IMG/VR virus record: IMGVR_UViG_3300025162_000016
Location: 248,001-312,000 of that record
Reading direction: 5' to 3' (one strand)
Length of the DNA: 64,000 bases
The notes beneath the pieces are model-generated. The model was given only the letters and a program-made list of their open reading frames with translations. It did no database searches and had not been told where the DNA came from. Made by a program: the position numbers and the translations under genes. Below are positions 31,857 through 63,770 of this stretch, one piece after another (the first letter of the stretch is position 1; every line of letters starts with the position of its first letter).

Positions 31857-31892
31857 AGTAAAATGCCGGAACAGACCAGCCACTACATCACC
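31857..31892 (+). repeat. Solitary degenerate CRISPR repeat in the 5' UTR of ORF 31903
   Basis: 29/36 identity to the array repeat; begins ~6 nt after TTGACA-17-TAGCAT. Confidence 0.8.
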
Positions 31893-31902
31893 AACATATC
31901 AC

Positions 31903-32241
31903 ATGACTGATCAAGAAATAAACGTTGCAATTGCAACTGTGTGTGGAGAAGAATATCATGAACCTACCGGAGAAGAAATTAAATCTGGTAGTTATTATCA
32001 ATATCAGCCAAACTACACCGGCGACTTAAATGCGATTCATTCTGCATGGTCGCAATTATCCATCGCAAAACAGGTTCTGGCCTGTAGCGAGCTTGAACGC
32101 CTGTGCTATGGCCCTTGCGATACAAAATTGAGGGTCGTCAATGCAAGTGCTCGTCTGAAATCGGAAGCCTTTTTGCGGGCAGAAGGAAAATGGAAGACTA
32201 GTTCAAAAATGACACCCGCTCAGAAAGCTAGCCGAAAGTAA
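31903..32241 (+). CDS. Hypothetical phage protein
   Basis: MTDQEINVAIA...PNYTGDLNA motif common in phage proteins. Confidence 0.65.
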   Translation: MTDQEINVAIATVCGEEYHEPTGEEIKSGSYYQYQPNYTGDLNAIHSAWSQLSIAKQVLACSELERLCYGPCDTKLRVVNASARLKSEAFLRAEGKWKTSSKMTPAQKASRK

Positions 32242-32275
32242 AATCTGAGACTGTGACAGCGAAAGCGACAGGGGC

Positions 32276-32515
32276 GTGGAAATCGCCTGGGTGTCACCAT
32301 TTTTTAAAATTATGAAATTAAATGACCTACCACCATTAGATCAAGCAGAAATCATTGCAAACAGAATTGCCAATATGGATGCTCTACGGGAACACGCCTT
32401 GAAGAGTCGCAATCCAATTGAGTTGATGACGATTGAATTGGATGCACAGGCCAGACTTATGGGACTCAATATGGATTATTGTGAGGAATTAGATGATGAT
32501 GAATATGATCAATAA
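32276..32515 (+). CDS. Hypothetical protein
   Basis: Operonic ORF. Confidence 0.5.
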   Translation: MEIAWVSPFFKIMKLNDLPPLDQAEIIANRIANMDALREHALKSRNPIELMTIELDAQARLMGLNMDYCEELDDDEYDQ

Positions 32516-32517
32516 TA

Positions 32518-32724
32518 ATGACTAAATCACAACTACAAAAACACTTGGGGACCAAGCTAACATTTGAATTAGAAACATTCAGGATGTTATTTACGGACCT
32601 AGATGATAACCAACGTTTGGAATTAATCAAATCCCTTATTTGGACTTCGATTGACGCTCACGCTATGCATAAACGAGTTGTTAACGCAATTTTAAATCCT
32701 TCTTTTGAGAAAACACTTGATTAA
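32518..32724 (+). CDS. Hypothetical protein
   Basis: 5' end duplicated at ~33907-33955. Confidence 0.55.
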   Translation: MTKSQLQKHLGTKLTFELETFRMLFTDLDDNQRLELIKSLIWTSIDAHAMHKRVVNAILNPSFEKTLD

Positions 32725-32774
32725 CTCGGGAGCCAGCAAACCCCTGCCCTAAACATTTTATCTTGGCGGGAGCA

Positions 32775-32809
32775 GAAAACCCATCTGCTTTAGCGGGTGG
32801 GTAGTTCAT
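32775..32809 (+). repeat. Orphan IS605-type right end (TnpB3 family)
   Basis: GAAAACCCATCTGCTTTAGCGGGTGGGTAGTTCAT resembles the TnpB3 right end. Confidence 0.7.
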
Positions 32810-33011
32810 CAATATGAAAATTAGGCACATATATACAGTTATTAGAGAATACGAGATTGGTGCTGATGATCTCAAAGAAGAAATTGACTTTTTCAATGGT
32901 TCTATTATCGATGCATCGGGAGAATTTCTATATTCTGGAACTAGTGGGAAAGAAACAATCACAGTAAAAATGGAAATTGGAGATTAACATCAAAATACAG
33001 TTAAACAAAAT

Positions 33012-33431
33012 ATGACAAAATATAAAAAAATAATATGGGGTTTTGAACCTACTGATGATGTAACTTGTCTGGAACTTCCACAGAGGATTGCTTTTACTTT
33101 CGGTTATAATTGGGAAACGTCTACCATATATTCGAGAATGATTCCAATGGTTATAACTGATAAGAATTTTCGAGTTGGATTTGATCCCAACAGAAAATTA
33201 ATGAATCTGGTTAAGGATTATAAATCCTCGGAATATTTGGTAGTATGGACAGGTGAATTTTTGATTAAAATGTTAAATAATCCTCCGTTGAATCCAATAG
33301 TAATCGAATCTACTGACGGTAAACTATCGGTTCACATTGAATCGGATAATGTGGTTTTTGTGGATAGCGATAAGTCGATTCAAGTTAGTGTTCCAAAGAA
33401 ATTAGTACGGCAGACGGCGGGATTGTGTTAG
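33012..33431 (+). CDS. Hypothetical protein, paralog of ORF 34129
   Basis: Shares KI.W.F.P...QRIAF.FGY.W. Confidence 0.6.
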   Translation: MTKYKKIIWGFEPTDDVTCLELPQRIAFTFGYNWETSTIYSRMIPMVITDKNFRVGFDPNRKLMNLVKDYKSSEYLVVWTGEFLIKMLNNPPLNPIVIESTDGKLSVHIESDNVVFVDSDKSIQVSVPKKLVRQTAGLC

Positions 33432-33469
33432 TGTTCCAAAGAAATTAGTATGGCAGACGGCGGGATTGT
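33384..33469 (+). repeat. 43-bp tandem duplication at the gene end
   Basis: Two copies differing by one base. Confidence 0.9.
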
Positions 33470-33545
33470 TATTAAAATAGAATAAAGACTCCATCGAACG
33501 AAAGATGGGGCTTCTTTTTGTATATAGTTGGATATTTATATCTAT

Positions 33546-33887: not shown

Positions 33888-33955
33888 ATTAAAAGATATA
33901 ATAGATATGACCAAATTACAACTACGAAAACACTTGGGGACCAAGCTAACATTTG

Positions 33956-34074
33956 ACAATGTGGAACTTGCGAAATATGGCGTTTGATGTTGACAAATCA
34001 GGGATAATAGAATACATTACCGCTCGCAAATTGATACACGGTTTTTTGATAATACGATAGTTACAATGGATACA
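33956..34074 (+). promoter_or_regulatory. Second copy of the CRISPR leader with promoter
   Basis: Homologous to the reverse complement of ~50345-50463; TTGACA-17-TACATT, CCGCTCGCAAATTGATACAC. Confidence 0.9.
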
Positions 34075-34110
34075 GGTGAAGTGCTGGAACAGATCAGATA
34101 CTATATCACC
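34075..34110 (+). CRISPR. Solitary CRISPR repeat after the duplicated leader
   Basis: 34/36 identity to consensus. Confidence 0.9.
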
Positions 34111-34811: not shown

Positions 34812-34847
34812 GGTGAAGTGCTGGAACAGACCAGCTACTATATCACC
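34812..34847 (+). CRISPR. Solitary CRISPR repeat
   Basis: 35/36 identity to consensus. Confidence 0.9.
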
Positions 34848-34965
34848 TTGTATGGTATGAATGATTGCTGGAACCCGGTTGACCTAGCGGCTGAATATGA
34901 TGCTCTCATAGTTCAACCGGAAAACGATTGACAAATTAATATAATTCTGATAGTCTTTACCCACA

Positions 34966-35298
34966 ATGAAAAACGAACAATTGAAGTGGTTTCCATATTA
35001 CCAGAATAACAGCGGGGGCACGCTCCTAATTGACAACGAGGTTGCCGAGACAGTATATGTCCAAGCTCATTCCGCCAATGAGGCGAATAAAATTGCTGAA
35101 TCACATGGTATCTATTTCGACGGTTGCACCGAGGGAACAGATTGTTCCTGCTGTGGAGATCGTTGGAGTCGAACTATTGACCGATGCGGAACGGATGTTC
35201 CCTGCCACTATGGGAAGCCGATTTCGTCGTGGGACGTGCCTGACAACGGAGTTGATAAGACTCGCCGTTATCGACGGTTTCATCGGTTCGGTCTGTGA
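34966..35298 (+). CDS. Conserved phage hypothetical protein
   Basis: Y.QNNSGG...GIYFDG...DC.CCGDRW motif. Confidence 0.7.
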   Translation: MKNEQLKWFPYYQNNSGGTLLIDNEVAETVYVQAHSANEANKIAESHGIYFDGCTEGTDCSCCGDRWSRTIDRCGTDVPCHYGKPISSWDVPDNGVDKTRRYRRFHRFGL

Positions 35299-35343
35299 AT
35301 CGGGCTTGACTTATTATAATAATTCTGATAGTCTTTACCCAAG

Positions 35344-35637
35344 ATGAAAAACACACAAAGCAATGACGTGATGACTAAAGACGAGATGCAAAAACTCCTA
35401 ATGCAGTGCTGGCATAGGGAAATATCGGTGGAAGAAGCTATGGCATCATTTATCTGGGTAGAACCGCTGGTCGAGGAAACGCTGGGAACGAATGTCGAGG
35501 TTAATGATGAGTGTCTTGAGGCTTTGCAGCCGGTAGATAAAAAAACAGATGATTTTTATTACACTGGAATCCCTGACATAGATATGCGGCGGGTGATTCA
35601 AATGGAAGCCAATAGAATATATTCAGATCGAAGTTGA
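35344..35637 (+). CDS. Hypothetical protein
   Basis: Cassette promoter; truncated paralog at ~34677-34790. Confidence 0.6.
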   Translation: MKNTQSNDVMTKDEMQKLLMQCWHREISVEEAMASFIWVEPLVEETLGTNVEVNDECLEALQPVDKKTDDFYYTGIPDIDMRRVIQMEANRIYSDRS

Positions 35638-35671
35638 CATTGTATAATAATTCTGATAGTCTTTACCCAAG

Positions 35672-35872
35672 ATGAGCACAGACTATATAAACAGATCAGA
35701 ATTTGACGGATTAACGGATTGGCAGAAGCGGTTGTTGATGCGTTGGGGCCGGCGATATGGAGCAGGTTATCCTCCCGGCAGGCCGTTGGCCTTGGCTTCC
35801 ATGAAATTCAACAAGCGATATAGTTATGATCGAATTGACCAGAGGTTTATAAACTGGCTTTACACTTACTAA
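35672..35872 (+). CDS. Hypothetical protein
   Basis: Cassette promoter. Confidence 0.6.
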   Translation: MSTDYINRSEFDGLTDWQKRLLMRWGRRYGAGYPPGRPLALASMKFNKRYSYDRIDQRFINWLYTY

Positions 35873-35927
35873 AATAATTCAGATCGAAGTTGACATTTTA
35901 GAATAACTCTGATAGTCTTTACCCGAG

Positions 35928-36155
35928 ATGAAAAACGAAGAACTTGTATTATTGCTTAAGGCTGCATTTGCGGCGGGGTTCCGTTACGGGCACGACGCCG
36001 GGGCGGATGCAGAATGGGGCCATGGATGTTCAATAAGTAACAAGCCACAAACGCCGGATAAGGCGTGGTCGGAGGATGTCCAATGGAGGATCGACACCGA
36101 TAGTAGTTATCACCTGGATGTTGAAAACCGAGAGCATTGGAACAACGTTCCATAG
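35928..36155 (+). CDS. Hypothetical protein
   Basis: Cassette promoter. Confidence 0.6.
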   Translation: MKNEELVLLLKAAFAAGFRYGHDAGADAEWGHGCSISNKPQTPDKAWSEDVQWRIDTDSSYHLDVENREHWNNVP

Positions 36156-37410: not shown

Positions 37411-37413
37411 AAT

Positions 37414-49168: not shown

Positions 49169-49369
49169 ATGACTATTTCAATTAAAACCGCATCTCGTAA
49201 AGATATTCAGCAGTTCCAACGATGGGTTAAGTTACAACCTTGGTCTGAAATATCTTTTCTCCACGAAACTTACCTCCGAGATGATTGCCGTGAAGAAAAA
49301 TTGAAAATTCTCTTCGCCAAATTCTCCGCTCTACCACTAAATCAACGGTTTCCAGCGGGTGATAGGTGA
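49169..49369 (+). CDS. Small hypothetical protein converging on the array trailer
   Basis: TTGACT-17-TACATA promoter; stop codon lies inside the terminal repeat. Confidence 0.45.
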   Translation: MTISIKTASRKDIQQFQRWVKLQPWSEISFLHETYLRDDCREEKLKILFAKFSALPLNQRFPAGDR

Positions 49370-50344
49370 TATAGTGACTGGTCTGTTCCAGCACTTCACC
49401 GGCGAAGCACCTGCTCGGCAAGGACCGCTACCACGAGGTGGTGATATAGTAACTGGTCTGTTCCAGCACTTCACCATTACCGATGTTTCTTTATAGCATA
49501 TACATATAACGGCGGTGATATAGTAACTGGTCTGTTCCAGCACTTCACCTAGGCGACTGAGTTAGGGGCTTTTCCTATATAGCGGTGGTGATATAGTAAC
49601 TGGTCTGTTCCAGCACTTCACCTGAATATGCATTGCCTCTGGTGCAACAATTCGGATAGGTGATATAGTAACTGGTCTGTTCCAGCACTTCACCCAGATA
49701 GAAGATGATAAACCGGATTCTCTACTGATGGTGATATAGTAACTGGTCTGTTCCAGCACTTCACCTTGAAAGGATACCATAGGAAGGATATGTATTACTC
49801 ATGGTGATATAGTAACTGGTCTGTTCCAGCACTTCACCTAGAGTTTGCTTTTGATGAAAGCCAATATGCTGCGGGTGATATAGTAACTGGTCTGTTCCAG
49901 CACTTCACCTCTTTTTTTATTGCTCTATGAGCAGAGACTTGGCTCTGGTGATATAGTAACTGGTCTGTTCCAGCACTTCACCTCTTTTTTTATTGCTCTA
50001 TGAGCAGAGACTTGGCTCTGGTGATATAGTAACTGGTCTGTTCCAGCACTTCACCGTAGAGTTCAGCACTTGGAATATCCATTACTATGATAGGTGATAT
50101 AGTAACTGGTCTGTTCCAGCACTTCACCCATATTTTCCAGTTGGTTCGGGCAAATCAATCGTGGGTGATATAGTAACTGGTCTGTTCCAGCACTTCACCT
50201 TCTTTACTCCATTCCCAGAAGGCTAATGCGAGCGGTGGTGATATAGTAACTGGTCTGTTCCAGCACTTCACCAAATGCAAGTTATCACTATATTTCGCCA
50301 ACTCGAACGGTGATATAGTAACTGGTCTGTTCCAGCACTTCACC
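49365..50344 (-). CRISPR. CRISPR array: 14 repeats (36 nt, GGTGAAGTGCTGGAACAGACCAGTTACTATATCACC as transcribed), 13 spacers of 35-39 nt
   Basis: Read directly; variant trailer repeat at 49365; spacers 49910-49946 and 49983-50019 identical. Confidence 0.99.
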
Positions 50345-50465
50345 TGTATCCCTCGTAAGTAACGTATTATCAAAGAACTGTGTATCAATTTGCGAGCGGC
50401 AGTGTATTCTATTATCCCCGGTTTGTCAACATCAAATATCATATTTCGTAAGTTCCATATTATCA
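50345..50465 (-). promoter_or_regulatory. CRISPR leader with sigma70 promoter
   Basis: Minus-strand TTGACA-17-TACACT; CCGCTCGCAA motif recurs at ~50390, ~50480 and inverted at ~50514. Confidence 0.85.
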
Positions 50466-50523: not shown

Positions 50524-52800
50524 TTAACATAAAAGTCCCAGCTCAATATCATAATTAATATGATAGTTATTCAATGCCCACATTGTAATTGGGTCATCGG
50601 CATCGTCCCGAATTTTCTCTAGCGGTTCAATAATTCCGGCATTAAGTAATCGTTGGTGTACATTTCCAAATACCGTTACCGAATTTCTGCTAATATCCGC
50701 ATATCCGAGGGTAATATCTTTAGATTTAATTCTTTCAATGACAGTCGGATCGATTACAACTGTAAATTTTTGAGTTTTTATCAATCGCATTAAATTACCT
50801 ACGGTGCGGAGATTTCCCTTGGAAAAGTTATCTTCAATCCGAGAAATCATATTCCAATTGCTAGTTGTTAACGTGTCTCTCGCTGCCGATGTTCCCATTG
50901 CCGGAATCCATTCATTTTTTTCTAATTTACGAAATACATTAATCGCTCTTTGTGTCGTAGGATTAATAGTTATTGTTCCCTTTCGGATTAATGATTCAGA
51001 AAAACAAAAAACATATACTTTTCCGATTTTAAATTCATTATTCCTATTACATCTTCCGGTGCATTGTTGAAGTGAATCTAAACTGGTTTCTTCTCGATAA
51101 CACCGCTCAAATGATATATCAATACCACATTCTACCATTGAGGTGGCAATTAATATGACCGGTAATTCATCTTTTATTTTTTGTTTTATTAATTCCAATC
51201 TTTTTTCTCTAAACTCCGGTGTCACTCGACTACTCAAATGATAGACATTCCCATTTCCGCTATTCAATAATTTAAATAAAACCTTCGCATTATTAGTGGT
51301 ATTACATACTATTAAAGTAGAATGTTTGTTTTTATATCCATTAGTTATATGCCGACATAATTTACCTAATCCAATAGCTCCCAGATGCGATTTTTTAACC
51401 CGTGTATTTTCTCTCGCCTGAAAATGCTTCCATTCCGTATGTGTAAGCATATTATCCACTACTATATTTTTATGATATAAATCCCAAAAATCAATGGGAG
51501 TCCCGGAACTAAAAATAACGTGAACATTATAATTGTTTACTAATTTTTCTAATAAAAATAACGCATGTGACCATAATTCATATGGCATCGCTTGATGATA
51601 CTCATCAAGAACAATGACCGAATCCGTAAAATGAATGAGTTTCCCTATCGCTGCGGGATGATAAGTAGTCAATGCCTCGAAAAATTGCACGCAAGTAGTA
51701 TACGTTAATGGACCATCTAATCTATTATTATATTTTCGCAACCGCCAATCTGTAAACTGAACCATAGAATGATGCTCGTTAATAACCCCTACCTGATACT
51801 CTCCCGGTAACAAAAGAGATTCTTTTGCTTTACCAACAAGTTGATTGATAACATTAATATATGGGGCCACAATAAATATTCGTTCACACCCATATTTTTT
51901 TGCCATTTTCAATGCCTTTTTATGATTAGCATTGGTTTTACCCGAACCTACCGTACCATCGTTTTTTATCCAAGATGAGATAGATTCCCTATCCGCCGAC
52001 GCATAAAGAAGCTTCCGATCTTTAATTCTTTTACCGGGATTTATTTTACTTAATCCATCATTATATTTATCAAAATTTTCAATACGCTCATCCTCTCGAA
52101 GTTTATATGGCTCAGGTAGCACATATCCATCATTACGAAATTGATTGGTGTCGGCGTGATCAGCAGACACCATGCAGGAAAAACACTCTGATATATCATG
52201 CCAATCAACATTTTTAATATTAATGTTATACCCAACATCCGGCATTGAATCCGTAATAATTATATCTTCTTTATGTAGTTGTTCCCATATAATAAGATTA
52301 GCATCTACATAATCTCTTATACGATAATCCCGCCATTTTTCTTTAAGATGTATTTTGGTCGGCGATAACATTTGTGACGGATTAACAAGAGTAATTTTAG
52401 TTAATTCTTCCCAATCTATATAACCAATATGATGAGCCAATATCAGCCACGCTGCTAAAAGATAATATAATTCATTGGTTCGTTCATATTCCTTAATACA
52501 ATGCGATACTCCTGCATCAACATGGTTAAGCATTGACGTATCGCTTTCGCTTGATTGTGAAAGAATTGCTTGACATTCCGGCATCAATTTTCCCAAATCA
52601 TGCCATTCTGTAGCAGTTTCAAGTATTTTCCGATAGAAATTTACCATTTTTCTATTCTTATAATGACGAAATCTACGATCAAACTCCCGCAAGGCGTTAT
52701 TACGTACCGCATGAATGTGATCCCGATATAATTGCGGAGCAACTGTACGGTTCGATGCGTTCACCTGATAACCGGAATGGGCAAAATTTTCTGTCAGCAT
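50524..52800 (-). CDS. cas3: Cas3 helicase-nuclease (HD + SF2)
   Basis: DH, WHDLGK, NH..AG, AHH, SADH; GSGKT, APYINVINQ, DEYH, SGT, NT, ATSMVECGID, QCTGRCNR. Confidence 0.93.
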   Translation of the reverse strand: MLTENFAHSGYQVNASNRTVAPQLYRDHIHAVRNNALREFDRRFRHYKNRKMVNFYRKILETATEWHDLGKLMPECQAILSQSSESDTSMLNHVDAGVSHCIKEYERTNELYYLLAAWLILAHHIGYIDWEELTKITLVNPSQMLSPTKIHLKEKWRDYRIRDYVDANLIIWEQLHKEDIIITDSMPDVGYNINIKNVDWHDISECFSCMVSADHADTNQFRNDGYVLPEPYKLREDERIENFDKYNDGLSKINPGKRIKDRKLLYASADRESISSWIKNDGTVGSGKTNANHKKALKMAKKYGCERIFIVAPYINVINQLVGKAKESLLLPGEYQVGVINEHHSMVQFTDWRLRKYNNRLDGPLTYTTCVQFFEALTTYHPAAIGKLIHFTDSVIVLDEYHQAMPYELWSHALFLLEKLVNNYNVHVIFSSGTPIDFWDLYHKNIVVDNMLTHTEWKHFQARENTRVKKSHLGAIGLGKLCRHITNGYKNKHSTLIVCNTTNNAKVLFKLLNSGNGNVYHLSSRVTPEFREKRLELIKQKIKDELPVILIATSMVECGIDISFERCYREETSLDSLQQCTGRCNRNNEFKIGKVYVFCFSESLIRKGTITINPTTQRAINVFRKLEKNEWIPAMGTSAARDTLTTSNWNMISRIEDNFSKGNLRTVGNLMRLIKTQKFTVVIDPTVIERIKSKDITLGYADISRNSVTVFGNVHQRLLNAGIIEPLEKIRDDADDPITMWALNNYHINYDIELGLLC

Positions 52801-52916: not shown

Positions 52917-55900
52917 ATGACAAAAGAAAAAATCAAAAAAACCAAAAAGGCAAAAGTAGAAAAAGACTCCGTAACACGGGCGGGTATTTTGCGGATATTG
53001 TTGAATCCAGATCAACATCAAGAACTCGATACTCTCATCTCTGACCACCAAGAGGCTGCTAGAGAAATTCAGACTGCGACATATAAATTATCTGGACTAA
53101 AGCTATATGACAAAACCAACAACATGGTGGTCGATGGTAGCAAAGCAACCCCCGAAGAACAAGAGGCTTATTATAAAATAATTAATTGGGAAGGTCAGCC
53201 AATTTCAATTTCCAATCCAATGGTGCGGGCTACATTTAAAAGTATAGCGAAAGTCAAAGAAGATATTCGTCGAAAACAGGAAGAGTATGCTAAGCTTGAA
53301 GAAGCGGATTTGACAAAAATGTCAACCGGTGATGTAAAAAAACATAAAAATGAACTTAGAAAAGCAGCAAACAGAATTAAACATTCTGAAGAGATTCTTC
53401 AGTTTGCCAAATGGCGACTTGCCGACATTTTTCCGCTCCCTCTATCGCACAACTCTCAGTTACATCTTAAAAATAACTATCACCAAAATGTATTCAGTGG
53501 ATTCCATGCACGAGTTAAAGGATGGAACGCATGTGATATTGCGGCTCAAGCAAATTATGCTGAGATAGATAACCGATTAACGGAGTTGTCTTCGGAATTA
53601 TCCGGTGATTATGGGAGCGAAGTTATAACCGATTTGATGGGCTTGTTACAATACACTAAAGAACTAGGAGAAGGATACACGGATACTTCTTATTTGAATT
53701 ATAAATTTTTATCGTTTTTTAAGGAATGCTGGCGACCCAATGCAATTGCTAATAACACCGGATTGCTAGAAGGATTTTGGCTGGCAAATAATAAACACAC
53801 CAATAAAAAAAATCAAGTTGCTTATTCTTTCAATCCAAAAATTAGTGAAGAATTGTTCCGACGAAGAAGTTTATGGGAATCTGATAAATGCCTTTTGTCT
53901 GATCCAAGATTTGAAAAATATGTTGAATTATTTGATAAACATGGTCGTTATCGTAAAGGAGCTTCCCTTACTTTAATTTCAAAAGAATCTCCCATTCCAA
54001 TCGGTTTCTCAATGGATCGCAATGCGGCTAAATTAGTCCGTATAGATAATGATACCGCCAATCGTCAATTAACCATTACTATCGAACTTCCCAATAAAGA
54101 AGAACGTTCTTATGTAGCTGCGTATGGACGTAAACATGAAACTAAATGTTATTATAATGGGCTTACAACAAGATTACCTCGTAGTGAGAAGGAGTTGCTT
54201 GCATTAGCCAAAGCAGAAAATCGTGAACTCACGGACAAAGAAATACATGAGGCATCACTTGAAAAGTGTTATATTTTTGAATATGCCCGAGCCGGTAAAA
54301 TACCGGTGTTTGCTGTCGTAAAAACATTATATTTTCGACGCAACCCGTCTAATGGTGAATATTATGTTATTCTTCCAACTAATATTTTTGTTGAATATCA
54401 CGCCAATAATGAATTCAATTCCAAGGAATTATTCAAAATTAGATCGGAGCTCCAAAAGGCATGGGATGAAGTTCGCACGCCTAAACGTAATGTTCAAAGC
54501 TGTGTTTTGGATAAAGACCTAAGTAAACGTTTTGCCGGTAGAACTTTGAAATATGCGGGAATAGACCTTGGATATAGTAATCCATATACGGTTAGTTATT
54601 ATAACGTGGTGGGAACAGAAGAAGGTATTCAAATCAAAGAAACGGGAAATGAAATTGTTTCTACGGTTTTTAATGAACAGTATATTCAACTCAAAGGGAA
54701 TATATACCAACTTATAAATATCATTCGTGCCTCCCGTCGATACTTACAAGAGAGCGGTGAATTAAAGCTAAGTAAAGATGATATTAAAAGTTTTGATCAA
54801 CTCATGGAGTTACTCCCATCCGAACAACGAATTACTATCGATCAATTCATTAAAGATATTAAAAAAGCAAAACAAGAGGGAAAGTTAATACGAGACATTA
54901 AAGGAAAACTCCCGGTTGAAGGGAAAAAGAAAGAATATTGGGTTATCAGTAATTTAATGTATGTTATTACTCAAACAATGAATGGTATTCGGGGAAATAG
55001 AGATTCTAATAATCATCTCACCGAGAAGAAAAATTGGTTGTCGGCTCCCCCATTAATTGAATTGATTGATGCTTATTATAATCTTAAAAAAACATTCAAT
55101 GATTCCGGTGATGGAATTAAAATGCTTCCTAAAGATCATGTATATGCCGAAGGAGAAAAACAACGGTGTACTCTAAGAGAAGAAAACTTCTGTAAAGGTA
55201 TTTTAGAGTGGCGGGATAATGTTAAAGATTATTTCATTAAAAAATTATTCTCCCAAATCGCTCACCGCTGTTACGAATTAGGAATCGGTATCGTAGCAAT
55301 GGAGAATCTTGATATAATGGGATCATCTAAAAATACTAAACAAAGTAATCGTATGTTTAATATCTGGCCCAGAGGACAAATGAAAAAATCTGCCGAAGAT
55401 GCGTTTAGTTATATGGGTATATTAATCCAATATGTCGATGAAAATGGAACCAGTCGCCATGATGCCGATTCCGGTATTTATGGTTGTCGTGATGGTGCAA
55501 ATCTATGGCTACCTAATAAAAAATTGCACGCCGATGTAAACGCCTCTCGAATGATCGCTCTACGAGGACTTACTCATCATACTAATCTGTATTGTAGAAG
55601 TTTAACCGAAATAGAAAATGGAAAGTACGTTAATACATATGAATTGTTCGATACCACAAAAAATGACCAAAGTGGAGCGGCAAAACGACTCCGTGGAGCA
55701 GAAACTCTTCTACATGGTTATTCCGCTACCGTATACCAAATCCATACCACAAACACCGGTGCCGGTGTTGCCTTACTACCTGACTTAACTGCAACCGATG
55801 TCATTAAAAATAAAAAAATCACCGCCACAAAAGAAAATACAGCCAAATATTATAAATTAGATAATACTAATACCTACTACCCATGGAGTGTATGTGAAAA

Positions 55901-55928
55901 ACTTCACAAAAATTGGAAACTATCATAA
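52917..55928 (+). CDS. cas12: Class 2 type V effector (Cas12h/Cas12b-like), 1003 aa
   Basis: RuvC-I GIDLG, RuvC-II VAMENL, GTS..D..SG..G.R, RuvC-III HADVNA..IALRGL.H; adjacent array. Confidence 0.88.
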   Translation: MTKEKIKKTKKAKVEKDSVTRAGILRILLNPDQHQELDTLISDHQEAAREIQTATYKLSGLKLYDKTNNMVVDGSKATPEEQEAYYKIINWEGQPISISNPMVRATFKSIAKVKEDIRRKQEEYAKLEEADLTKMSTGDVKKHKNELRKAANRIKHSEEILQFAKWRLADIFPLPLSHNSQLHLKNNYHQNVFSGFHARVKGWNACDIAAQANYAEIDNRLTELSSELSGDYGSEVITDLMGLLQYTKELGEGYTDTSYLNYKFLSFFKECWRPNAIANNTGLLEGFWLANNKHTNKKNQVAYSFNPKISEELFRRRSLWESDKCLLSDPRFEKYVELFDKHGRYRKGASLTLISKESPIPIGFSMDRNAAKLVRIDNDTANRQLTITIELPNKEERSYVAAYGRKHETKCYYNGLTTRLPRSEKELLALAKAENRELTDKEIHEASLEKCYIFEYARAGKIPVFAVVKTLYFRRNPSNGEYYVILPTNIFVEYHANNEFNSKELFKIRSELQKAWDEVRTPKRNVQSCVLDKDLSKRFAGRTLKYAGIDLGYSNPYTVSYYNVVGTEEGIQIKETGNEIVSTVFNEQYIQLKGNIYQLINIIRASRRYLQESGELKLSKDDIKSFDQLMELLPSEQRITIDQFIKDIKKAKQEGKLIRDIKGKLPVEGKKKEYWVISNLMYVITQTMNGIRGNRDSNNHLTEKKNWLSAPPLIELIDAYYNLKKTFNDSGDGIKMLPKDHVYAEGEKQRCTLREENFCKGILEWRDNVKDYFIKKLFSQIAHRCYELGIGIVAMENLDIMGSSKNTKQSNRMFNIWPRGQMKKSAEDAFSYMGILIQYVDENGTSRHDADSGIYGCRDGANLWLPNKKLHADVNASRMIALRGLTHHTNLYCRSLTEIENGKYVNTYELFDTTKNDQSGAAKRLRGAETLLHGYSATVYQIHTTNTGAGVALLPDLTATDVIKNKKITATKENTAKYYKLDNTNTYYPWSVCEKLHKNWKLS

Positions 55929-55929
55929 T

Positions 55930-56390
55930 CGCCAAATGTTGTAACATATCAGTTATTATATCACCGGCGAACTGTGAACTCTCGCAGAAACAAAAGAAAT
56001 GCTTTCTGCTTGACTTTTTCAAAAATATCGGTATCATACCAATATGAATGAATCATTGGTATGTGGACGGTTAACCGCCCATAAAAAACCTTGTCAAAAT
56101 TAACCCGTTTTTTATATTATATATATATAAAAACATATCTACGTATTCTTAAAGGTGAAGTGCTGGAACAGACCAGTTACTATATCACCGATATAATATC
56201 GGTAACATACCAATATGAATACAAAAACAGATATGAAACAATATGATACCGAAACCCTGTCCCCTCTCATCTATATAGTAAAAAAAATATCCTTACCTAC
56301 ATAAAGATATATCTACATATTCAAAATATAAAAACATATCTACGTATTCTTAAAGGTGAAGTGCTGGAACATATCAGTTACTATACCACC
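55930..56390 (+). CRISPR. Three widely spaced repeat copies after cas12 (55930-55965 degenerate, 56154-56189 perfect, 56355-56390 3 mismatches)
   Basis: Direct comparison with consensus. Confidence 0.8.
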
Positions 56391-58908: not shown

Positions 58909-59082
58909 TTTCGCTTGACTTTTTTTGGTCAATCGGTATAGTGTTATCTGCTCTCTCTCGGTATAGTGCCGGGAGGGGCATTTTTTATTTATTCACCGGC
59001 AACAATTCTAAGGTTAGAGTTGATCAACTGTGGGGGGGGGATATGATTTCGTTTGACTTTTGCATGTTCTGGAATATGCAAT

Positions 59083-59747: not shown

Positions 59748-59832
59748 TGGTTTACAATAAAGACGGCGAGAAAAGTAAAATATTCTTTCCGTCTTTTCTT
59801 GACTTTTTATATTATATTCATACACTATACCC

Positions 59833-60642
59833 ATGAATAAAACAAAATTAAGTTTCACTCACGGCAATGCAAAGTTATCAAAAGACACTGCAATTCTTTC
59901 CCTTCCGGCAGGATATACATGTCCTTTTGCGAACGAGTGCCGGTCTTGTTCGGATAAAGTTACCGGCAAGATTAAAGATGGTCCACATACGCAATTCCGT
60001 TGTTATGCCACAACGGCAGAGTGTTTATTTCCTAACATACGGAGAAGTCGGTGGAATAATTTTGAGCTTATTAAAAACGCTAAAACAACAATCGGTATGG
60101 CAAATTTGATTGAACAATCTTTGGAAGGGAAGAAAAAAATCAAATTGGTTAGATTTCATCAAAGCGGCGATTTCTTTTCGCAAGCATATTTCGATGCTTG
60201 GCTTATGGTTGCTCAAAATCATTCTAATCTAATTTTCTATGGTTATACTAAGGCATTGCCTTATTGGGTAAAGCGATTAGAGGCAATTCCTGCTAATTTT
60301 AGGATTGTAGCCTCAAGGGGTGGGACGCATGACAATTTGATTGAAATGTTTGGGTTGCGGTCGGTGCGGGTTGTGTTATCTGAGCGAGAGGCACGCCGGA
60401 AATGGAAGCTTCAAATTGACCATGATGATTCGCATGTCTGGAATTATGACAAGGACTTTGCCATTGTCATACATGGCATCCAACCGGCGGGAACAAAGGC
60501 TAGTAAAGCATGGCAGAAAATTAAAACGCATGGCAAAGGTGGATATAAAGCCAAATATTTTGGTGACAAGAAAGTTAAAAAGCAGAATAGTGCAGAAGGC
60601 TGGAAAGTTAAACGAGTTTTTGCCGATAAAATAGCGGCATAA
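59833..60642 (+). CDS. Gene product 88 (GP88)-like protein
   Basis: GNAKL, LSLPAG.TCP.A..C, CYA, RFHQSGDF, YGYTK. Confidence 0.75.
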   Translation: MNKTKLSFTHGNAKLSKDTAILSLPAGYTCPFANECRSCSDKVTGKIKDGPHTQFRCYATTAECLFPNIRRSRWNNFELIKNAKTTIGMANLIEQSLEGKKKIKLVRFHQSGDFFSQAYFDAWLMVAQNHSNLIFYGYTKALPYWVKRLEAIPANFRIVASRGGTHDNLIEMFGLRSVRVVLSEREARRKWKLQIDHDDSHVWNYDKDFAIVIHGIQPAGTKASKAWQKIKTHGKGGYKAKYFGDKKVKKQNSAEGWKVKRVFADKIAA

Positions 60643-60693
60643 AAAACACTAAATACCGTTGACTTTAATCAAGTTAACGGTATTCTTTTATTT

Positions 60694-60882
60694 ATGAGAA
60701 CAATACTTGGTCCCGGTGCAAAGTGCCGGGGATATGTTAAAGAGACTGCTAATGGTAAGGAATTGCTTTCTTCTGGCGGTACCTTACTGGGATACTATAA
60801 TGAAGATACTGATCAAACACTTGAGCCAGGGGGAAACTTGTATTCCTATGGTGATTGTCTTATCGAATTGCTTGAAGATTAA
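60694..60882 (+). CDS. Small hypothetical protein
   Basis: Leaderless promoter; G.LLGYY repeat-like sequence. Confidence 0.6.
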   Translation: MRTILGPGAKCRGYVKETANGKELLSSGGTLLGYYNEDTDQTLEPGGNLYSYGDCLIELLED

Positions 60883-60898
60883 TGTTAACACTATGAAC

Positions 60899-61210
60899 AT
60901 GAATAATAGAGTTACCCTACAGCGAACAATATTTACTAATTGGAACACCCAAAATCAGACTTACGGATACCGTGCGTATGATGATCAAGGGCAAACGTAC
61001 GGGAATTGTTTTTCTCTTTTGCAAATGAATTTGCCGGATGATCAATTCTTTAGATTGGTTTATTCGCAGTGTGATGAAATGGTGGCGGCAATGGTAGATT
61101 CCTGTTATGAGAATGCGCTTGGAATTGAAATTGATGGGGACGATAAATCGTATGAATGGGTGAAAGAAACACTTGCAAAAGAGACAGAAATCAGTAATAT
61201 GACGGTATAA
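60899..61210 (+). CDS. Hypothetical protein (start at MNNRV or slightly upstream)
   Basis: 3' part of ORF 60707-61210. Confidence 0.55.
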   Translation: MNNRVTLQRTIFTNWNTQNQTYGYRAYDDQGQTYGNCFSLLQMNLPDDQFFRLVYSQCDEMVAAMVDSCYENALGIEIDGDDKSYEWVKETLAKETEISNMTV

Positions 61211-61223
61211 GAATAATAAAAAC

Positions 61224-61529
61224 ATGAAAATTACATTGAATCAAGCATATCGGTTATTGGAAGATTGTTCGGCGGTTATTTGGGCGGATTATTTTCTTAC
61301 ATTCCCAGCATTGCAAGATGAGGATAATGAGCCAAAAATGTTTTTGTCCTTAGACTCTACGGATGAACACGGGAAAGTGTTTCTGGTGGAATTCTATCGA
61401 CAAGATAATCAAGAAGTTAAAGCGATTGGGAATTCTTTATTTCTCACGGATACAACGGGTGAAGAAATTCAACTAACATTATTGCATGCAATGAACACGG
61501 AAATTTATTTGGATGGAAAACCGGATTAA
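61224..61529 (+). CDS. Hypothetical protein
   Basis: Operonic; terminator at ~61543-61572. Confidence 0.6.
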   Translation: MKITLNQAYRLLEDCSAVIWADYFLTFPALQDEDNEPKMFLSLDSTDEHGKVFLVEFYRQDNQEVKAIGNSLFLTDTTGEEIQLTLLHAMNTEIYLDGKPD

Positions 61530-61609
61530 TTAAATCTATTAGTTTCCCGTCTATAACAGGGCGGGGAACTAAGTCTTGACAAAACAGAAATGTAGTATAT
61601 TATCCTAAT

Positions 61610-61822
61610 ATGATTATTAACAAAATTACCTATGGGTTTGTAGTTCAACAATGGGATACAGAAAAAAAACAATGGGTTGGACAAGACTTTGTTGCCGGGG
61701 ACGTGGTTGAATTTGAAGATGAAACGGGGGATATGATTGATGATGCGGAAATGGAAGAAATCGAGAGCAAGCCAGCATTATCATTTAAAATGGTTCAACC
61801 AGAAAACGAAGCAAAGGCTTGA
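61610..61822 (+). CDS. Hypothetical protein
   Basis: Own promoter near 61577. Confidence 0.6.
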   Translation: MIINKITYGFVVQQWDTEKKQWVGQDFVAGDVVEFEDETGDMIDDAEMEEIESKPALSFKMVQPENEAKA

Positions 61823-61894
61823 CAATTCCAACTAAAGCAGTATAATTTAAGTCGGTGGTTGCATGTTCTGGAATATGTGCTATATATGATAGAC

Positions 61895-62120
61895 AGTGAA
61901 GTGCTGGAACAGACCAGTTACTATATCACTTTATGTTGTTATCTTTTTTAAATTTATCCCTTGTGAATAAATCTAAGGTTAGAGTTAAAATAACTTGCAT
62001 GTTTCGGGGATAAGTGCTATATATGATAGACAGTGAAGTGCTGGAACAGACCAGTCACTAAAACACTGGGAATATGTGCTACTGTATGCGATAATGAAGT
62101 GCTGGAACAAACCGACATTG
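61895..62120 (+). repeat. Three repeat copies (61895-61930, 62032-62067, partial 62093-62120), the first two behind TTGCAT...TATATA promoter-like units
   Basis: 34/36 and 31/36 identity to consensus. Confidence 0.88.
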
Positions 62121-62153
62121 AAAATAGTTGACTTTTGATGGTGTATCGGTATA

Positions 62154-62804
62154 ATGAGCAAGATGAAACAAATTGAAGTTGAATTCAAAACTAATGCCAA
62201 TGGCACCGGGATGCAATTTTTCCGGCAAATTAAAAAAGGTTTTACCCCTAAAGGTAAAGCTGTATACATATATGAACGTATTCATGCGATTGGAGATAAA
62301 GAAGGGGAAACATTTGGATTTGAAGTTATTGCGCCTTCGATAAAGAAGGCAGGAACGTATTCGTTACCTGGTGGCAAATCAATTACGTATGCTGAGGATT
62401 TTGAGGAATATCCTGGGGCGTCTAAGTTTGGAATATCAGCCTGGTCGTATCCCGCTTATCAAGCTGGCGGGGCACGATGGAAATTTGAACAGCTTACAAA
62501 AGAACTAATAGAAATTGAAGAAATCGAAGAAACTAATAATATGATTGAAAACGATAATGTAGATACAAATGAAGTGCCGTCTAATGTTACTAAGTCGAGG
62601 GGACGGCCCAAGAATGATCGTCCGTTGCTAAGTATTCCGTCGGGGGAGTTTAGTACAACGGAGCTATGTAAACTAAACAATACTGATTATTCTGTGGCGG
62701 CAGTGTTTTTGAGGGACTGTGAAGCGGCTGGGACGGTAAAGCGAACCCGTACCGAGAGGCGTAATGCTAAGGGGAAGGAAACTCAATTGTTTCAAGTTGT
62801 GTAA
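62154..62804 (+). CDS. Hypothetical protein with AT-hook and C-terminal winged-helix-like region
   Basis: RGRPK motif; TERRNAKGKETQLF. Confidence 0.6.
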   Translation: MSKMKQIEVEFKTNANGTGMQFFRQIKKGFTPKGKAVYIYERIHAIGDKEGETFGFEVIAPSIKKAGTYSLPGGKSITYAEDFEEYPGASKFGISAWSYPAYQAGGARWKFEQLTKELIEIEEIEETNNMIENDNVDTNEVPSNVTKSRGRPKNDRPLLSIPSGEFSTTELCKLNNTDYSVAAVFLRDCEAAGTVKRTRTERRNAKGKETQLFQVV

Positions 62805-62806
62805 AT

Positions 62807-63130
62807 ATGAAATCGAATAAGCCTATCCCTGAAACATATACGAACCGTGTAGCTCAATTTAACAAGACTGAGCAACGATTGCCTAATGTTCCTGTTAAAG
62901 GCAAGGAGCCGGGTTCTACGCTCACGGATACGACCAAAGAAAACCCTTATATGATTGCTCGTCTTAAAGTTCTTAATGACTATAAAGAGGGTAGGCGTAT
63001 TGAAGTGTTGGCAATGGAAAGAGATAATAGAATTGATCACCGGCATTATGAGGAATTCGTTACCGATGTTCTTAGGGTAGCCGGGGATATTCCTTCTCTG
63101 GCTATCCGAAATCGAATCAAAGGAATCTAA
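62807..63130 (+). CDS. Hypothetical protein
   Basis: Followed by a terminator at 63151-63180. Confidence 0.6.
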   Translation: MKSNKPIPETYTNRVAQFNKTEQRLPNVPVKGKEPGSTLTDTTKENPYMIARLKVLNDYKEGRRIEVLAMERDNRIDHRHYEEFVTDVLRVAGDIPSLAIRNRIKGI

Positions 63131-63189
63131 TCTAATCTAATCTAATCTACAAATCCCCTGTCAAGTGACGGGGGATTTTTTATATATTT

Positions 63190-63388
63190 AGTGAATTACT
63201 GGAACAGACCAGTCACTATCAACTCTAAGATTAGAATTAAAACGAATTGCATTTTTTTGAAATTTCTAGTGAATTACTGGAACAGACCAGTCACTAAAAC
63301 ACTACCGGAGAAGGAGTAATAATTTTTTATCACCCTTCTCCGGCATATATGTAGTGACGTGCTGGGATATATCAGTCACTAAAACACT
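63190..63388 (+). repeat. Degenerate three-repeat mini-array (63190, 63268, 63353)
   Basis: CTGGAACAGACCAGTCACT core; gaps of 42 and 49 nt, the second a CCGGAGAAGG/CCTTCTCCGG hairpin. Confidence 0.8.
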
Positions 63389-63644
63389 CAGACTGTACGG
63401 TAAAGGTATCAGCACTTTCCCAACTAAAATGATCTACGATTGCTTTACCGGCAGCATCATCTTGATCAAATGCCAATTTGGGTTCAAAATCCGCTTGTTC
63501 CGCTTTATTCATAGCAAATTTATAATGATACCCATTATCGTAATCATCTTCGGTACAGATTAATTTACAAAAGTAAAAGTCTGGTTCTCCATTACTGTTA
63601 ATCCCGGCTACCATCATCTTTAAGTCAAGCATAAAGTCAAGCAT
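63372..63644 (-). CDS. Hypothetical protein
   Basis: Stop overlaps the repeat copy at 63353. Confidence 0.55.
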   Translation of the reverse strand: MLDFMLDLKMMVAGINSNGEPDFYFCKLICTEDDYDNGYHYKFAMNKAEQADFEPKLAFDQDDAAGKAIVDHFSWESADTFTVQSECFSD

Positions 63645-63734
63645 ATTTTTGTTTTTAATCGGTTAATTGTTTTTTTACTGTGATATGATTATACGGATTT
63701 ACGGATAGGAGTCAACTAATAAATGTATATATTT

Positions 63735-63770
63735 AGTGACGTGCTGGAACAGACCAGTCTCTATATCTCT
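63735..63770 (+). repeat. Solitary degenerate CRISPR repeat
   Basis: 30/36 identity to consensus. Confidence 0.85.

What the first reader, a model, noticed from the sequence alone, without database searches (positions are those of the whole stretch)
31857..63770. About 15 solitary CRISPR-repeat copies dispersed over 32 kb, same strand, with structure-preserving changes
Seen: copies start at 31857, 34075, 34812, 55930, 56154, 56355, 59083, 59172, 61895, 62032, 62093, 63190, 63268, 63353 and 63735, all in crRNA sense on the + strand. The substitutions are non-random. G1>A is paired with C36>T in several copies, the bulged base 24 varies freely (T/A/C), and T25>C turns a G.U pair into G-C. Several copies sit directly behind -35/-10 boxes. 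Established: solitary repeat units can act as RNA anti-CRISPRs, and mini-array crRNA-like RNAs can direct Cas transcriptional repression. Inference: the phage may use its own Cas12 as a genome-wide regulator or RNA-processing enzyme, or titrate it or a host effector with decoy RNAs.
Basis: partly seen in the sequence, partly recalled or inferred. Interest (0 to 1): 0.9.

Follow-up and report, generated by a model that had tools for sequence, protein, structure and literature searches.

The report
Scattered CRISPR repeats in huge phage
A 369-kb phage that carries its own unusual CRISPR system (a Cas12-like nuclease paired with Cas3, plus four arrays) also has at least 19 single copies of its CRISPR repeat between genes; they most likely make guide-like RNAs for regulation rather than immunity, though some may be array debris.

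Summary
All 15 copies lie at the stated coordinates on the + strand. A covariance model finds exactly these 15, the 14 array repeats on the - strand, and nothing else in 64 kb. The crRNA sense is confirmed by a conserved leader and by degenerate terminal repeats in four arrays.

Two details are overstated. Covariation among the copies rests on one pair (1-36) and does not beat shuffles. Only 2 of 19 copies start at +1 of a good promoter.

The gene next to the array is Cas3. The effector is a 1003-aa Cas12-like protein with an intact RuvC triad. Cas3 sits beside it in all seven relatives with context.

The copies are heterogeneous:
- an orphan leader plus one repeat (34075);
- near-perfect copies;
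- an AGTG..CACT subfamily inside duplicated palindrome-plus-repeat modules (59-64 kb);
- decayed copies.

They keep the 5' arm and loop but relax the spacer-proximal motif that is invariant in orthologous arrays.

In two relatives, stand-alone repeats upstream of cas genes are followed by sequence that partly repeats the start of the downstream cas gene.

Best reading: crRNA-like regulatory RNAs for the phage's own Cas12 (confidence 0.42). Neutral array debris is the main rival. No targets were found.

The parts
31857..31892 (+). Stand-alone repeat, decayed (7 substitutions). It starts at +1 of promoter TTGACA-17-TAGCAT (31822-31850). The ATG of a 112-aa ORF lies 10 nt downstream.
   Evidence: (43.8 bits)
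33955..34110 (+). Orphan CRISPR leader (about 120 nt, 88-90% identical to the leaders of the four arrays) plus a single repeat (34075-34110). The ATG of a 183-aa ORF lies 18 nt downstream.
   Evidence: (55.2 bits)
34812..34847 (+). Near-perfect stand-alone repeat (1 substitution) in the diverged 3' part of a truncated paralogue of ORF 35344-35637.
   Evidence: (58 bits)
55930..55965 (+). Strongly decayed repeat that starts 2 nt after the cas12 stop codon, upstream of a hairpin that looks like the cas12 terminator. It carries the G18T+C20T variant.
   Evidence: (42 bits)
56154..56189 (+). Perfect stand-alone repeat in a 1.3-kb non-coding region. It shares 29 nt of upstream sequence with 56355. 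Promoter-like site at 56091-56120.
   Evidence: D3; 59.2 bits
56355..56390 (+). Stand-alone repeat (3 substitutions, including G18T+C20T), followed by a partial duplication of its 3' end and a poly-C tract.
   Evidence: 52.2 bits
59083..59207 (+). Two AGTG-type repeats (59083-59118 and 59172-59207) 89 nt apart. The second starts at +1 of promoter TTGATA-16-TATAAT (59138-59165). The first 11 nt after repeat 59083 equal the start region of gene 59295.
61895..62128 (+). Three AGTG-type repeats (61895, 62032 and the decayed 62093) downstream of promoter 61819-61846 and upstream of the promoter and start of gene 62154.
63190..63388 (+). Three AGTG-type repeats (63190, 63268, 63353) spaced 78 and 85 nt apart, after terminator 63151-63178. 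They face a convergent - strand ORF. Copy 63353 carries G18T+C20T.
63735..63770 (+). AGTG-type repeat between two - strand ORFs, followed by a partial duplication of its 3' end.
   Evidence: (51.4 bits)
49365..50344 (-). CRISPR array of 14 repeats of 36 nt with spacers of 35-39 nt. The terminal repeat 49365-49400 carries T25C. Spacers 5 and 6 are identical.
50345..50464 (-). Array leader, conserved at 91-97% among the four arrays of the genome. It contains a TTGACA-17-TACACT promoter-like site.
50524..52800 (-). Cas3 (HD nuclease plus helicase, 758 aa).
52917..55928 (+). Cas12-like effector (1003 aa) with RuvC residues D550, E796 and D873 invariant in relatives. It belongs to a rare clade.
59007..59018 (+). 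TCTAAGGTTAGA box, part of the module upstream of repeat 59083. The same box occurs at 61972-61983 (upstream of 62032) and 63224-63235 (beside 63190, upstream of 63268).

Best explanation
The copies are stand-alone repeat units and mini-arrays derived from the phage's own Cas12-Cas3 CRISPR arrays. They are transcribed in crRNA sense, from their own promoters or from upstream ones. The resulting crRNA-like RNAs would be taken up by the phage's Cas12-like effector. Their 'guides' are fixed, not acquired. They therefore serve regulation, not immunity: Cas12 directed to, or held off, particular phage sequences, and/or control of how much free Cas12 is available.

Shown: the identity, orientation, completeness, intergenic position and class structure of the copies; the cognate effector and arrays; and the different constraint on the copies compared with array repeats.

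Inferred: transcription, Cas12 binding and the regulatory outcome.

At least one copy (34075) is simply a collapsed or minimal array.
For: 1. The copies have the same 36-nt unit and sense as the arrays, with sharp boundaries. Pairwise identity is 0.81 in the repeat against 0.31 and 0.28 in the flanks. All lie in non-ORF DNA.

2. Ten of the 15 lie within 8 kb downstream of cas12 on its strand.

3. Two copies start at +1 of strong promoters. Others lie 30-45 nt behind promoters, and no terminator separates them from downstream sequence.

4. The AGTG subfamily sits in duplicated modules with a TCTAAGGTTAGA box. In these modules repeat columns 1-23 are nearly invariant while the flanks have diverged.

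5. The loop AACAGA and the TGAAG motif, which are invariant in orthologous arrays, are kept. The spacer-proximal CTATATCA motif, also invariant in orthologous arrays, is relaxed: 1.38 against 0.70 extra alleles per column, P = 0.03. This is a constraint different from that on array repeats.

6. Relatives show the same logic. L074 has a diverged solitary repeat upstream of its cas operon. The sequence just after it repeats the start of the first operon gene: 9 repeat-proximal nt, then 9 more after a 1-nt indel. L023 has a 2-repeat mini-array just upstream of cas12 whose spacer is 29/36 identical to cas12. L028 has a solitary repeat with compensatory stem changes.

7. Stand-alone repeats next to cas12a, and crRNA-like regulators, are established (10.1101/2023.03.03.530964; 10.1101/2024.10.29.618823).
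Against: No pseudo-spacer has a partial or seed match in the roughly 104 kb (28%) of the genome that was readable. None matches the cas3-cas12 intergenic region or the array leader with 9 or more repeat-proximal nt. A 16-nt scan of IMG/VR found no second site in this genome.

The one cis match, 11 nt shared between pseudo-spacer 59083 and the start of gene 59295, is not significant alone (per-copy null 0.024 across 15 copies).

Stems are not better conserved than loops, and several copies have lost 4-6 of 13 pairs.

Repeats identical at birth with unrelated flanks are also what a broken-up array would give without any selection.

The partial matches in L023 and L074 lie within local duplications of the gene start, so they may be by-products of duplication. 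In L023 the mismatches are at the repeat-proximal end, which is the wrong end for a type V regulatory guide.

No expression data exist.
Confidence: 0.42

Rival explanations
1. Neutral debris. The copies are leftovers of arrays that collapsed by repeat-repeat recombination or were broken up by IS elements, gene insertions and local duplications. They are tolerated only where they do no harm, that is, between genes.
For: Copy 34075 is a full array leader with one repeat. Partial repeats and degenerate terminal repeats occur beside the real arrays. Terminal repeat B in L017 shares the GAATTACTGG..CCAGTCAC variant with copies 63190 and 63268. TnpB and IS607 genes sit next to arrays or single repeats in the window, L003, L021, L025 and L028. 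Many copies are visibly decaying, such as 55930, 62093 and 63190. Identical repeats with unrelated flanks need no selection. No targets were found.
Against: All 19 of 19 known copies lie on the contig's + strand, while the arrays lie on both strands. Decay is uneven and spares the motifs that a protein would read in RNA. In the duplicated modules the repeat is far better kept than its co-duplicated flanks. Solitary repeats recur near cas3-cas12 in distant relatives. 'Spacer' lengths of 25-101 nt do not look like an old array.
Confidence: 0.27
2. Cis-acting leader elements. The repeat hairpin in the 5' untranslated region, alone or bound and cut by Cas12, sets the stability or translation of the mRNA that follows. 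This would tie a set of phage genes to the level of Cas12.
For: The repeat ends 3-18 nt before an ATG at 31857, 34075, L004:325 and L018:3201. Genes 59295 and 62154 each have a distal promoter that would give a leader containing the repeat and a proximal promoter that would give a short or absent leader. No Shine-Dalgarno sequences are seen, so a -13 kcal/mol hairpin next to the start codon should matter. No terminator lies between the copies and the downstream genes.
Against: About half the copies have no co-directional gene downstream (56154, 56355, 63190-63353, 63735). The ORFs after L004:325 and L018:3201 are only 14 and 26 codons long. Copy 31857, the best-placed one, has lost 4 of 13 pairs in sense.
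Confidence: 0.15
3. Racr-type decoys. Highly expressed repeat-only RNAs soak up the Cas12 of a host or of a competing related phage, or the phage's own Cas12 late in infection.
For: Solitary repeats behind promoters are the defining anatomy of Racrs, and three V-A Racrs inhibit Cas12a (PMC10651486). The relaxed spacer-proximal motif would suit binding without productive targeting. Copy 61895 is followed by a U-rich stretch.
Against: The copies are linked to the phage's own cas genes and arrays, so they would inhibit the phage's own system. No array with this repeat family was found outside this phage and its relatives carrying cas3-cas12. No recognisable acr or aca genes lie nearby. Only 2 of 19 have a strong dedicated promoter.
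Confidence: 0.12
4. A DNA operator. The inverted repeat GTGCTGG-N6-CCAGTCAC is bound as double-stranded DNA by a phage transcription factor, just downstream of promoters.
For: The core is a palindrome. Two copies cover +1 to +36 of promoters.
Against: The 6-nt centre AACAGA is the best-conserved part, both in the copies and in orthologous arrays, while the arms covary freely. That is the signature of an RNA hairpin loop read by a protein, not of a dimer operator. The same sequence is the repeat of four arrays.
Confidence: 0.04

Closest known systems
Viral solitary repeat units / RNA anti-CRISPRs (Racr; Camara-Wilpert et al. 2023, PMC10651486)
   Same: Single CRISPR repeats in intergenic DNA of a phage, in crRNA sense, some directly behind promoters. 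The repeat hairpin is largely kept.
   Different: Racrs mimic the host's repeat, are not linked to cas genes, usually occur once or a few times per genome, and often sit beside acr genes. Here at least 19 copies mimic the phage's own arrays and cluster around its own cas12-cas3 genes. No host array of this type was found.
crRNA-like regulatory RNAs in CRISPR-cas loci (CreR/CreA, scaRNA, tracr-L; Shmakov et al. 2023, 10.1101/2023.03.03.530964)
   Same: Stand-alone or paired degenerate repeats beside cas genes; about half of V-A loci have them next to cas12a. The repeat variants are degenerate. In relatives L023 and L074 the adjacent pseudo-spacer partly repeats a cas-operon gene.
   Different: Those elements number one or two per locus and have a defined, PAM-proximal partial match to a cas or toxin promoter. 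In this window no such match was found for any of the 15 copies. The copies spread over 32 kb, and further ones lie elsewhere in the genome.
Viral Cracr RNAs and Cracr arrays (Liu et al., 10.1101/2024.10.29.618823)
   Same: Phage-borne, multiplexed crRNA-like units with irregular architecture.
   Different: Cracrs hijack host Cas proteins and match host cas promoters by at least 9 PAM-proximal bp. Here the matching effector is phage-encoded and no target is known.
Virus-borne mini-CRISPR arrays for inter-viral conflict (Medvedeva et al. 2019, as cited in PMC11656645)
   Same: Short arrays of one or two spacers in viral genomes.
   Different: Those have regular spacers that match related viruses. 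The 'spacers' here are 25-101 nt, contain promoters and duplicated module sequence, and match nothing found.

Membership tests
Stand-alone CRISPR repeat unit (SRU) of the genome's own arrays | Full-length similarity to a bona fide array repeat in the same genome | tested here: met
   36-59 bits against model R1, with nothing else above 11 bits. Zero to 10 substitutions per copy, and 15 in copy 62093.
Stand-alone CRISPR repeat unit (SRU) of the genome's own arrays | Solitary: no other repeat within about 100 bp (SRUfinder rule, PMC10651486) | tested here: inconclusive
   Met for 31857, 34075, 34812, 55930, 56154, 56355, 61895 and 63735. Not met for 59083/59172 (89 nt apart), 62032/62093 (61 nt) and 63190/63268/63353 (78 and 85 nt), which count as irregular mini-arrays.
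Stand-alone CRISPR repeat unit (SRU) of the genome's own arrays | Intergenic position | tested here: met
   Eleven copies have no overlap with ATG-ORFs of 75 aa or more. The four overlaps involve an alternative upstream start, a spurious antisense ORF (two copies), or 17 nt of an ORF end. Only 23% of the window is non-ORF.
Racr (RNA anti-CRISPR) | Mimics the repeat of the host's CRISPR-Cas system | not testable with these tools
   The host is unknown. Scans of IMG/VR and JGI metagenomes found this repeat family only on this phage and on relatives with cas3-cas12.
Racr (RNA anti-CRISPR) | Not genetically associated with cas genes or arrays | tested here: not met
   The phage carries cas12, cas3 and four arrays with the same repeat. 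Ten copies lie within 8 kb of cas12.
Racr (RNA anti-CRISPR) | Promoter within 250 bp upstream | tested here: met
   Consensus promoters lie upstream of 31857, 34075 (leader), 56154, 59083, 59172, 61895, 62032 and 62093. None is seen for 63190-63735. These are consensus matches only.
Racr (RNA anti-CRISPR) | Binds Cas protein and inhibits interference | not testable with these tools
   Needs biochemistry or a reconstituted system.
crRNA-like regulator (CreR / crlRNA / Cracr) | Pseudo-spacer with at least about 9 PAM-proximal bp matching a cas or toxin promoter | tested here: not met
   No prefix match of 9 nt or more to the cas3-cas12 intergenic region or the array leader. No seed match in 104 kb of the genome. 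Relatives L074 (9 nt) and L023 (29/36, distal end) do show partial matches to cas-operon genes. Host targets cannot be tested.
crRNA-like regulator (CreR / crlRNA / Cracr) | Degenerate repeat located in or beside the cas locus | tested here: met
   Copy 55930 starts 2 nt after the cas12 stop, and 56154-63735 lie downstream on the same strand.
Type V CRISPR-Cas | Single large effector with a RuvC domain next to an array | tested here: met
   The TnpB-related domain and PDB Cas12j19/Cas12X match at E = 7e-11. D550, E796 and D873 are invariant.
Type V CRISPR-Cas | No Cas3; the effector alone cleaves | tested here: not met
   A Cas3 HD-helicase gene is adjacent in the window and in 7 of 7 relatives with context. 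Whether Cas3 takes part in interference is untested.
Canonical CRISPR array | Leader followed by two or more repeats with regular unique spacers | tested here: not met
   Only 34075 has the leader, and it has one repeat. The clustered copies have irregular spacing and duplicated inter-repeat sequence.

The most novel reading that the evidence does not exclude
The phage has turned its CRISPR repeat into a portable Cas12-binding RNA tag. Placed at or near the 5' ends of transcripts across more than 100 kb of the genome, the tags make Cas12, with or without Cas3, a post-transcriptional or transcriptional regulator of a set of phage genes and of its own availability. This would be a virus-encoded, hard-wired CRISPR regulon that does not depend on spacer acquisition. 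A further variant is not excluded. Each tag would turn the adjacent phage sequence into a guide against related phages that lack the tag at that site, while the tagged genome is protected because the repeat occupies the PAM position.
Probability: 0.15. Interest if true: 0.85.

Novelty: new variant of a known kind. Interest (0 to 1): 0.6.

Why it matters
Stand-alone repeats in phages are known as decoys or hijackers of host Cas proteins. Stand-alone repeats inside bacterial cas loci are known as autoregulators. This case has a different configuration: a huge phage with its own rare Cas12-Cas3 system, four arrays, and at least 19 stand-alone repeats of the same family. Many of these sit in promoter-bearing modules and evolve under a constraint different from that on array repeats.

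If the copies are bound by the phage's Cas12, this would show how a virus wires a CRISPR effector into its own gene regulation. It would also provide a natural set of repeat variants that separate binding from targeting.

The conserved Cas12-Cas3 pairing is separately of interest for CRISPR classification and possibly as a long-range deletion tool.

If the copies are only debris, the locus still records how arrays decay in a genome without Cas1 or Cas2.

Tried and rejected
1. Pseudo-spacer targets. Ungapped 28-nt comparison, 14-nt seeds with up to 1 mismatch, and prefix matches were run against the window plus about 40 kb of other pieces of the genome. Only local duplications and promoter look-alikes appeared, all at null level. 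One IMG/VR scan with a 16-nt pseudo-spacer prefix returned only the site itself plus chance hits.

2. Array spacers. There are no self-matches and no significant hits in 50,697 phage records. One GC-rich spacer matches a Planctomycetaceae MAG gene at 29/39, with about 25 contiguous. This is homology to some conserved gene, not a clear protospacer.

3. Covariation within the copies is not above shuffles. G.U bias as an orientation test is balanced between sense and antisense.

4. Other phages with the 17-nt core (L006, L013, L014, L016) have chance core matches only.

5. A strain comparison with contig 3300009502_000028 showed 100% identity, so it gives no information. The contig of the 98%-identical Cas12 has no DNA on file.

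6. Repeat translated as protein: two frames are open, but their use is inconsistent.

7. Clean insertion of the repeat at 34812 into a paralogue: homology simply fades, and no target-site signature is seen.

8. Omega-RNA idea. I asked whether the repeat might be the guide flank of an IS607/TnpB right end. Adjacency is suggestive, but apart from a 15-mer there is no shared right-end sequence. This remains a lead.

9. Rfam has no family match to the repeat.

10. Neighbouring proteins have no informative Pfam or PHROG hits.

Full report
WHAT IS THERE

The window is positions 248,001-312,000 of a 368,758-bp IMG/VR viral contig, a huge phage. GC content is 36%.

A CRISPR array of 14 repeats of 36 nt lies at 49365-50344. 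Read on the - strand, the repeat is GGTGAAGTGCTGGAACAGACCAGTTACTATATCACC.

All 15 claimed stand-alone copies are present on the + strand in that same sense. The 17-nt core with up to 3 mismatches occurs 27 times against 0.04 expected. A covariance model built from the copies and run with filters off finds exactly the 15 copies (36-59 bits) and the 14 array repeats. The next hit scores 11 bits.

Pattern scans of IMG/VR and JGI metagenomes fetched other pieces of the same genome. About 104 kb is readable in all. It holds three more arrays (one in L003 on the - strand, two in L017 on the + strand) and four more stand-alone copies: L003:6633, L004:325, L007:14042 and L018:3201. All 19 stand-alone copies are on the contig's + strand.

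ORIENTATION AND STRUCTURE

The four arrays share a leader of about 120 nt (91-97% identity) upstream of the GGTGAAG sense. In each array the degenerate repeat is at the far end.

Across orthologous arrays from relatives, 6 of 12 pairs show compensatory double changes. TGAAG, the loop GAACARAC and the spacer-proximal CTATATCA stay invariant. The hairpin is therefore real.

Among the stand-alone copies the claim of structure-preserving change is weak.
- Only pair 1-36 covaries (AU 7, GC 5, unpaired 4), and 118 of 500 shuffles reach the observed score.
- Stem columns carry more substitutions than unpaired ones (2.8 against 1.8 per column), and 34 of 247 pairs are broken.
- Copy 31857 pairs better in antisense than in sense.
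- The A1/T36 pair marks one subfamily and may be a single event.

THE EFFECTOR

The 758-aa gene next to the array (50524-52800, -) is Cas3, with HD and helicase domains. It is not Cas12.

Divergent from it lies a 1003-aa protein (52917-55928, +). It has a TnpB-related RuvC/TNB region and matches Cas12j19/Cas12X structures at E = 7e-11 with a profile. GIDLG (D550), MENL (E796) and HADVNA (D873) are invariant in relatives.

The clade is rare. Only 10 representatives reach E <= 1e-30 among 1.84 billion proteins.

A Cas3 gene is adjacent in all seven relatives whose context could be read. It is divergent in the close ones and co-directional in the distant ones.

No Cas1, Cas2 or Cas4 is found in the window. 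Three TnpB genes are present.

THE COPIES ARE NOT ONE THING

i. Copy 34075 carries the full array leader at 88-90% identity. It is an orphan leader plus one repeat.

ii. Near-perfect GGTG..CACC copies are 34812, 56154, 56355, L003:6633, L004:325 and L018:3201. L004 and L018 share about 90 nt of upstream sequence. A solitary repeat in another phage fragment (L028) has a similar short upstream motif and compensatory stem changes.

iii. An AGTG..CACT subfamily comprises 59083, 59172, 61895, 62032, 62093, 63190, 63268, 63353, 63735 and L007:14042. It lies in duplicated modules made of a TCTAAGGTTAGA box, a TTGCAT box and the repeat.

iv. Copies 31857, 55930 and 62093 are heavily decayed. Copy 55930 begins 2 nt after the cas12 stop codon.

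Pairwise identity is 0.81 within the 36 nt and 0.31 and 0.28 in the flanks. All copies are in the 23% of the window that is not ORF.

Only 31857 and 59172 begin at +1 of a good promoter. Others lie 30-45 nt behind one, and none is followed by an intrinsic terminator.

Four copies end 3-18 nt before an ATG.

CONSTRAINT

Columns 1-23 (5' arm, loop, 3' arm of the inner stem) are about twice as conserved as columns 24-36. The extra alleles per column are 0.70 against 1.38, P = 0.03. Yet columns 27-34 are invariant in orthologous arrays.

The 6-nt loop is the best-kept part. This argues for an RNA hairpin read by a protein rather than a palindromic DNA operator. It also suggests the copies are kept for binding rather than for productive guide placement. 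This is inference, and the statistic is modest.

TARGETS

No pseudo-spacer matches anything in the readable 104 kb beyond local duplications. None matches the cas3-cas12 intergenic region or the leader with 9 or more repeat-proximal nt. One IMG/VR scan was negative.

Array spacers do not hit the phage itself or known phages.

The first 11 nt after copy 59083 equal the start region of gene 59295, which lies 171 nt downstream. The 11-mer occurs only three times in the window, but the per-copy null is 0.024, so this is only a lead.

RELATIVES

In L074, from a 168-kb phage contig, cas3 and cas12 are followed by a 2-repeat array. A 76%-identical solitary repeat lies upstream of the operon. The sequence directly after it repeats the start of the first operon gene: 9 nt, then 9 nt after a 1-nt indel.

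In L023 a 2-repeat mini-array sits just upstream of cas12. Its spacer is 29/36 identical to cas12 itself, beside an ATTT flank.

Both cases lie in local duplications of the gene start, so they could be by-products. Still, they repeat the anatomy of known crRNA-like autoregulators (10.1101/2023.03.03.530964).

INTERPRETATION

The best-supported reading is that the copies are stand-alone repeat units and mini-arrays giving crRNA-like RNAs for the phage's own Cas12, with a regulatory rather than immune role (0.42).

The main rival is neutral debris of arrays (0.27). It certainly explains 34075, and possibly the decayed copies.

Further rivals are cis-acting leader elements (0.15), Racr-type decoys (0.12) and a DNA operator (0.04).

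The Racr reading fails one defining feature, since the copies are linked to the phage's own cas genes and arrays. No host array of this family was found. The crRNA-like-regulator reading fails the target test in this window. So I file the finding as a new variant of the stand-alone-repeat kind, not as a member of either family.

NOVELTY AND VERDICT

The finding is real, complete and more than chance. Its mechanism is open. What is new is the configuration: many stand-alone repeats of a phage's own rare Cas12-Cas3 system, with several classes and a constraint distinct from that on array repeats. Interest is 0.6.

Noticed in passing
window 50524-55928; L021, L022, L023, L072, L073, L074: A Cas12-like effector with an intact RuvC triad is always next to a Cas3 HD-helicase gene, in 7 of 7 relatives with context. 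The pair is divergent in close relatives and co-directional in distant ones. I found no description of such a pairing in the papers searched. It could be an undescribed type V variant that uses Cas3.
   Followed up: partly
window 47791-48987 (-), 27644-28816 (-), 30174-31322 (-); L003:1242-2318, L003:4696-6536, L018:1613-2788, L028:694-1800, L021:3340-4965: TnpB genes (IS200/605 and IS607 types) repeatedly sit next to arrays or single repeats. L003:6633 starts 97 nt after an IS607-type tnpB. L021 and L025 have a repeat 116 nt before the IS607 resolvase. A 15-mer in the tnpB 3' end recurs upstream of L004:325 and L018:3201. The repeat may lie where an omega-RNA guide would be, or the IS elements may target arrays.
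   Followed up: partly
window 55966-57250: A 1.3-kb non-coding region downstream of cas12 holds five 49-bp tandem repeats (GGGTATTTCACCAATTTATTTTTATAAAATAAATATTAACTCTAAGAAT, 56757-56997), four TCTAAGGTTAGA boxes (56992-57112), a poly-C tract (56397-56413) and a complementary G-rich tract (57147-57180). It looks like an origin of replication or a regulatory hub. ATTTCACCAAT boxes recur after L007:14042.
   Followed up: partly
window 55930, 56355, 63353: The same double change, G18T + C20T (AACAGACCAG to AACATATCAG or GATATATCAG), occurs in three copies that belong to three different classes. This is either parallel change or short-patch conversion. It remains unexplained.
   Followed up: no
window 56381-56420, 63761-63778; L007:14068-14087; L017:1139-1170: The last 8-10 nt of the repeat (CTATATCAC) are duplicated in tandem right after four repeats. 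This may be a footprint of some process acting at the repeat-spacer junction.
   Followed up: no
window 49910-50019; L031:2082-2195 and 2598-2711: Spacers are duplicated within arrays. Spacers 5 and 6 of the window array are identical. Spacers 1-2 of array B recur as spacers 8-9. Several spacers are far more GC-rich than the phage. One (49401-49439) matches a gene of a Planctomycetaceae MAG at 29/39.
   Followed up: partly
L023:4864-5436: In a relative, the 5' end of cas12 is partly duplicated upstream of the gene. A 2-repeat mini-array lies between the duplicate and the real start. The called 1035-aa ORF probably starts at 5171.
   Followed up: partly
window 34927-40909: A family of eight near-identical promoter-plus-start modules (TTGACA-N17-GATAGT...ATGAAAAAC) lies in front of small paralogous genes, including a DUF7296 protein. 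The leaders are very short and have no Shine-Dalgarno sequence.
   Followed up: no
window 3199-3237, 4670-4760, 4975-5065: Three copies of another intergenic hairpin repeat (GTGGCAGTAGTTTTAGATTTTACTAAGCACTACCAC) lie among - strand genes. They fold on the - strand at about -20 kcal/mol for the 101-nt unit.
   Followed up: partly
window 1-31000 and 38137-40184: The window also has NAD-salvage and ADP-ribose genes (NAPRTase, NAD synthase, ADP-ribosylglycohydrolase, a PARP-like domain), ThyX, DHFR, dCMP deaminase, DNA and RNA ligases, and five tRNA genes. This is typical huge-phage cargo, and some of it may act as counter-defence.
   Followed up: no
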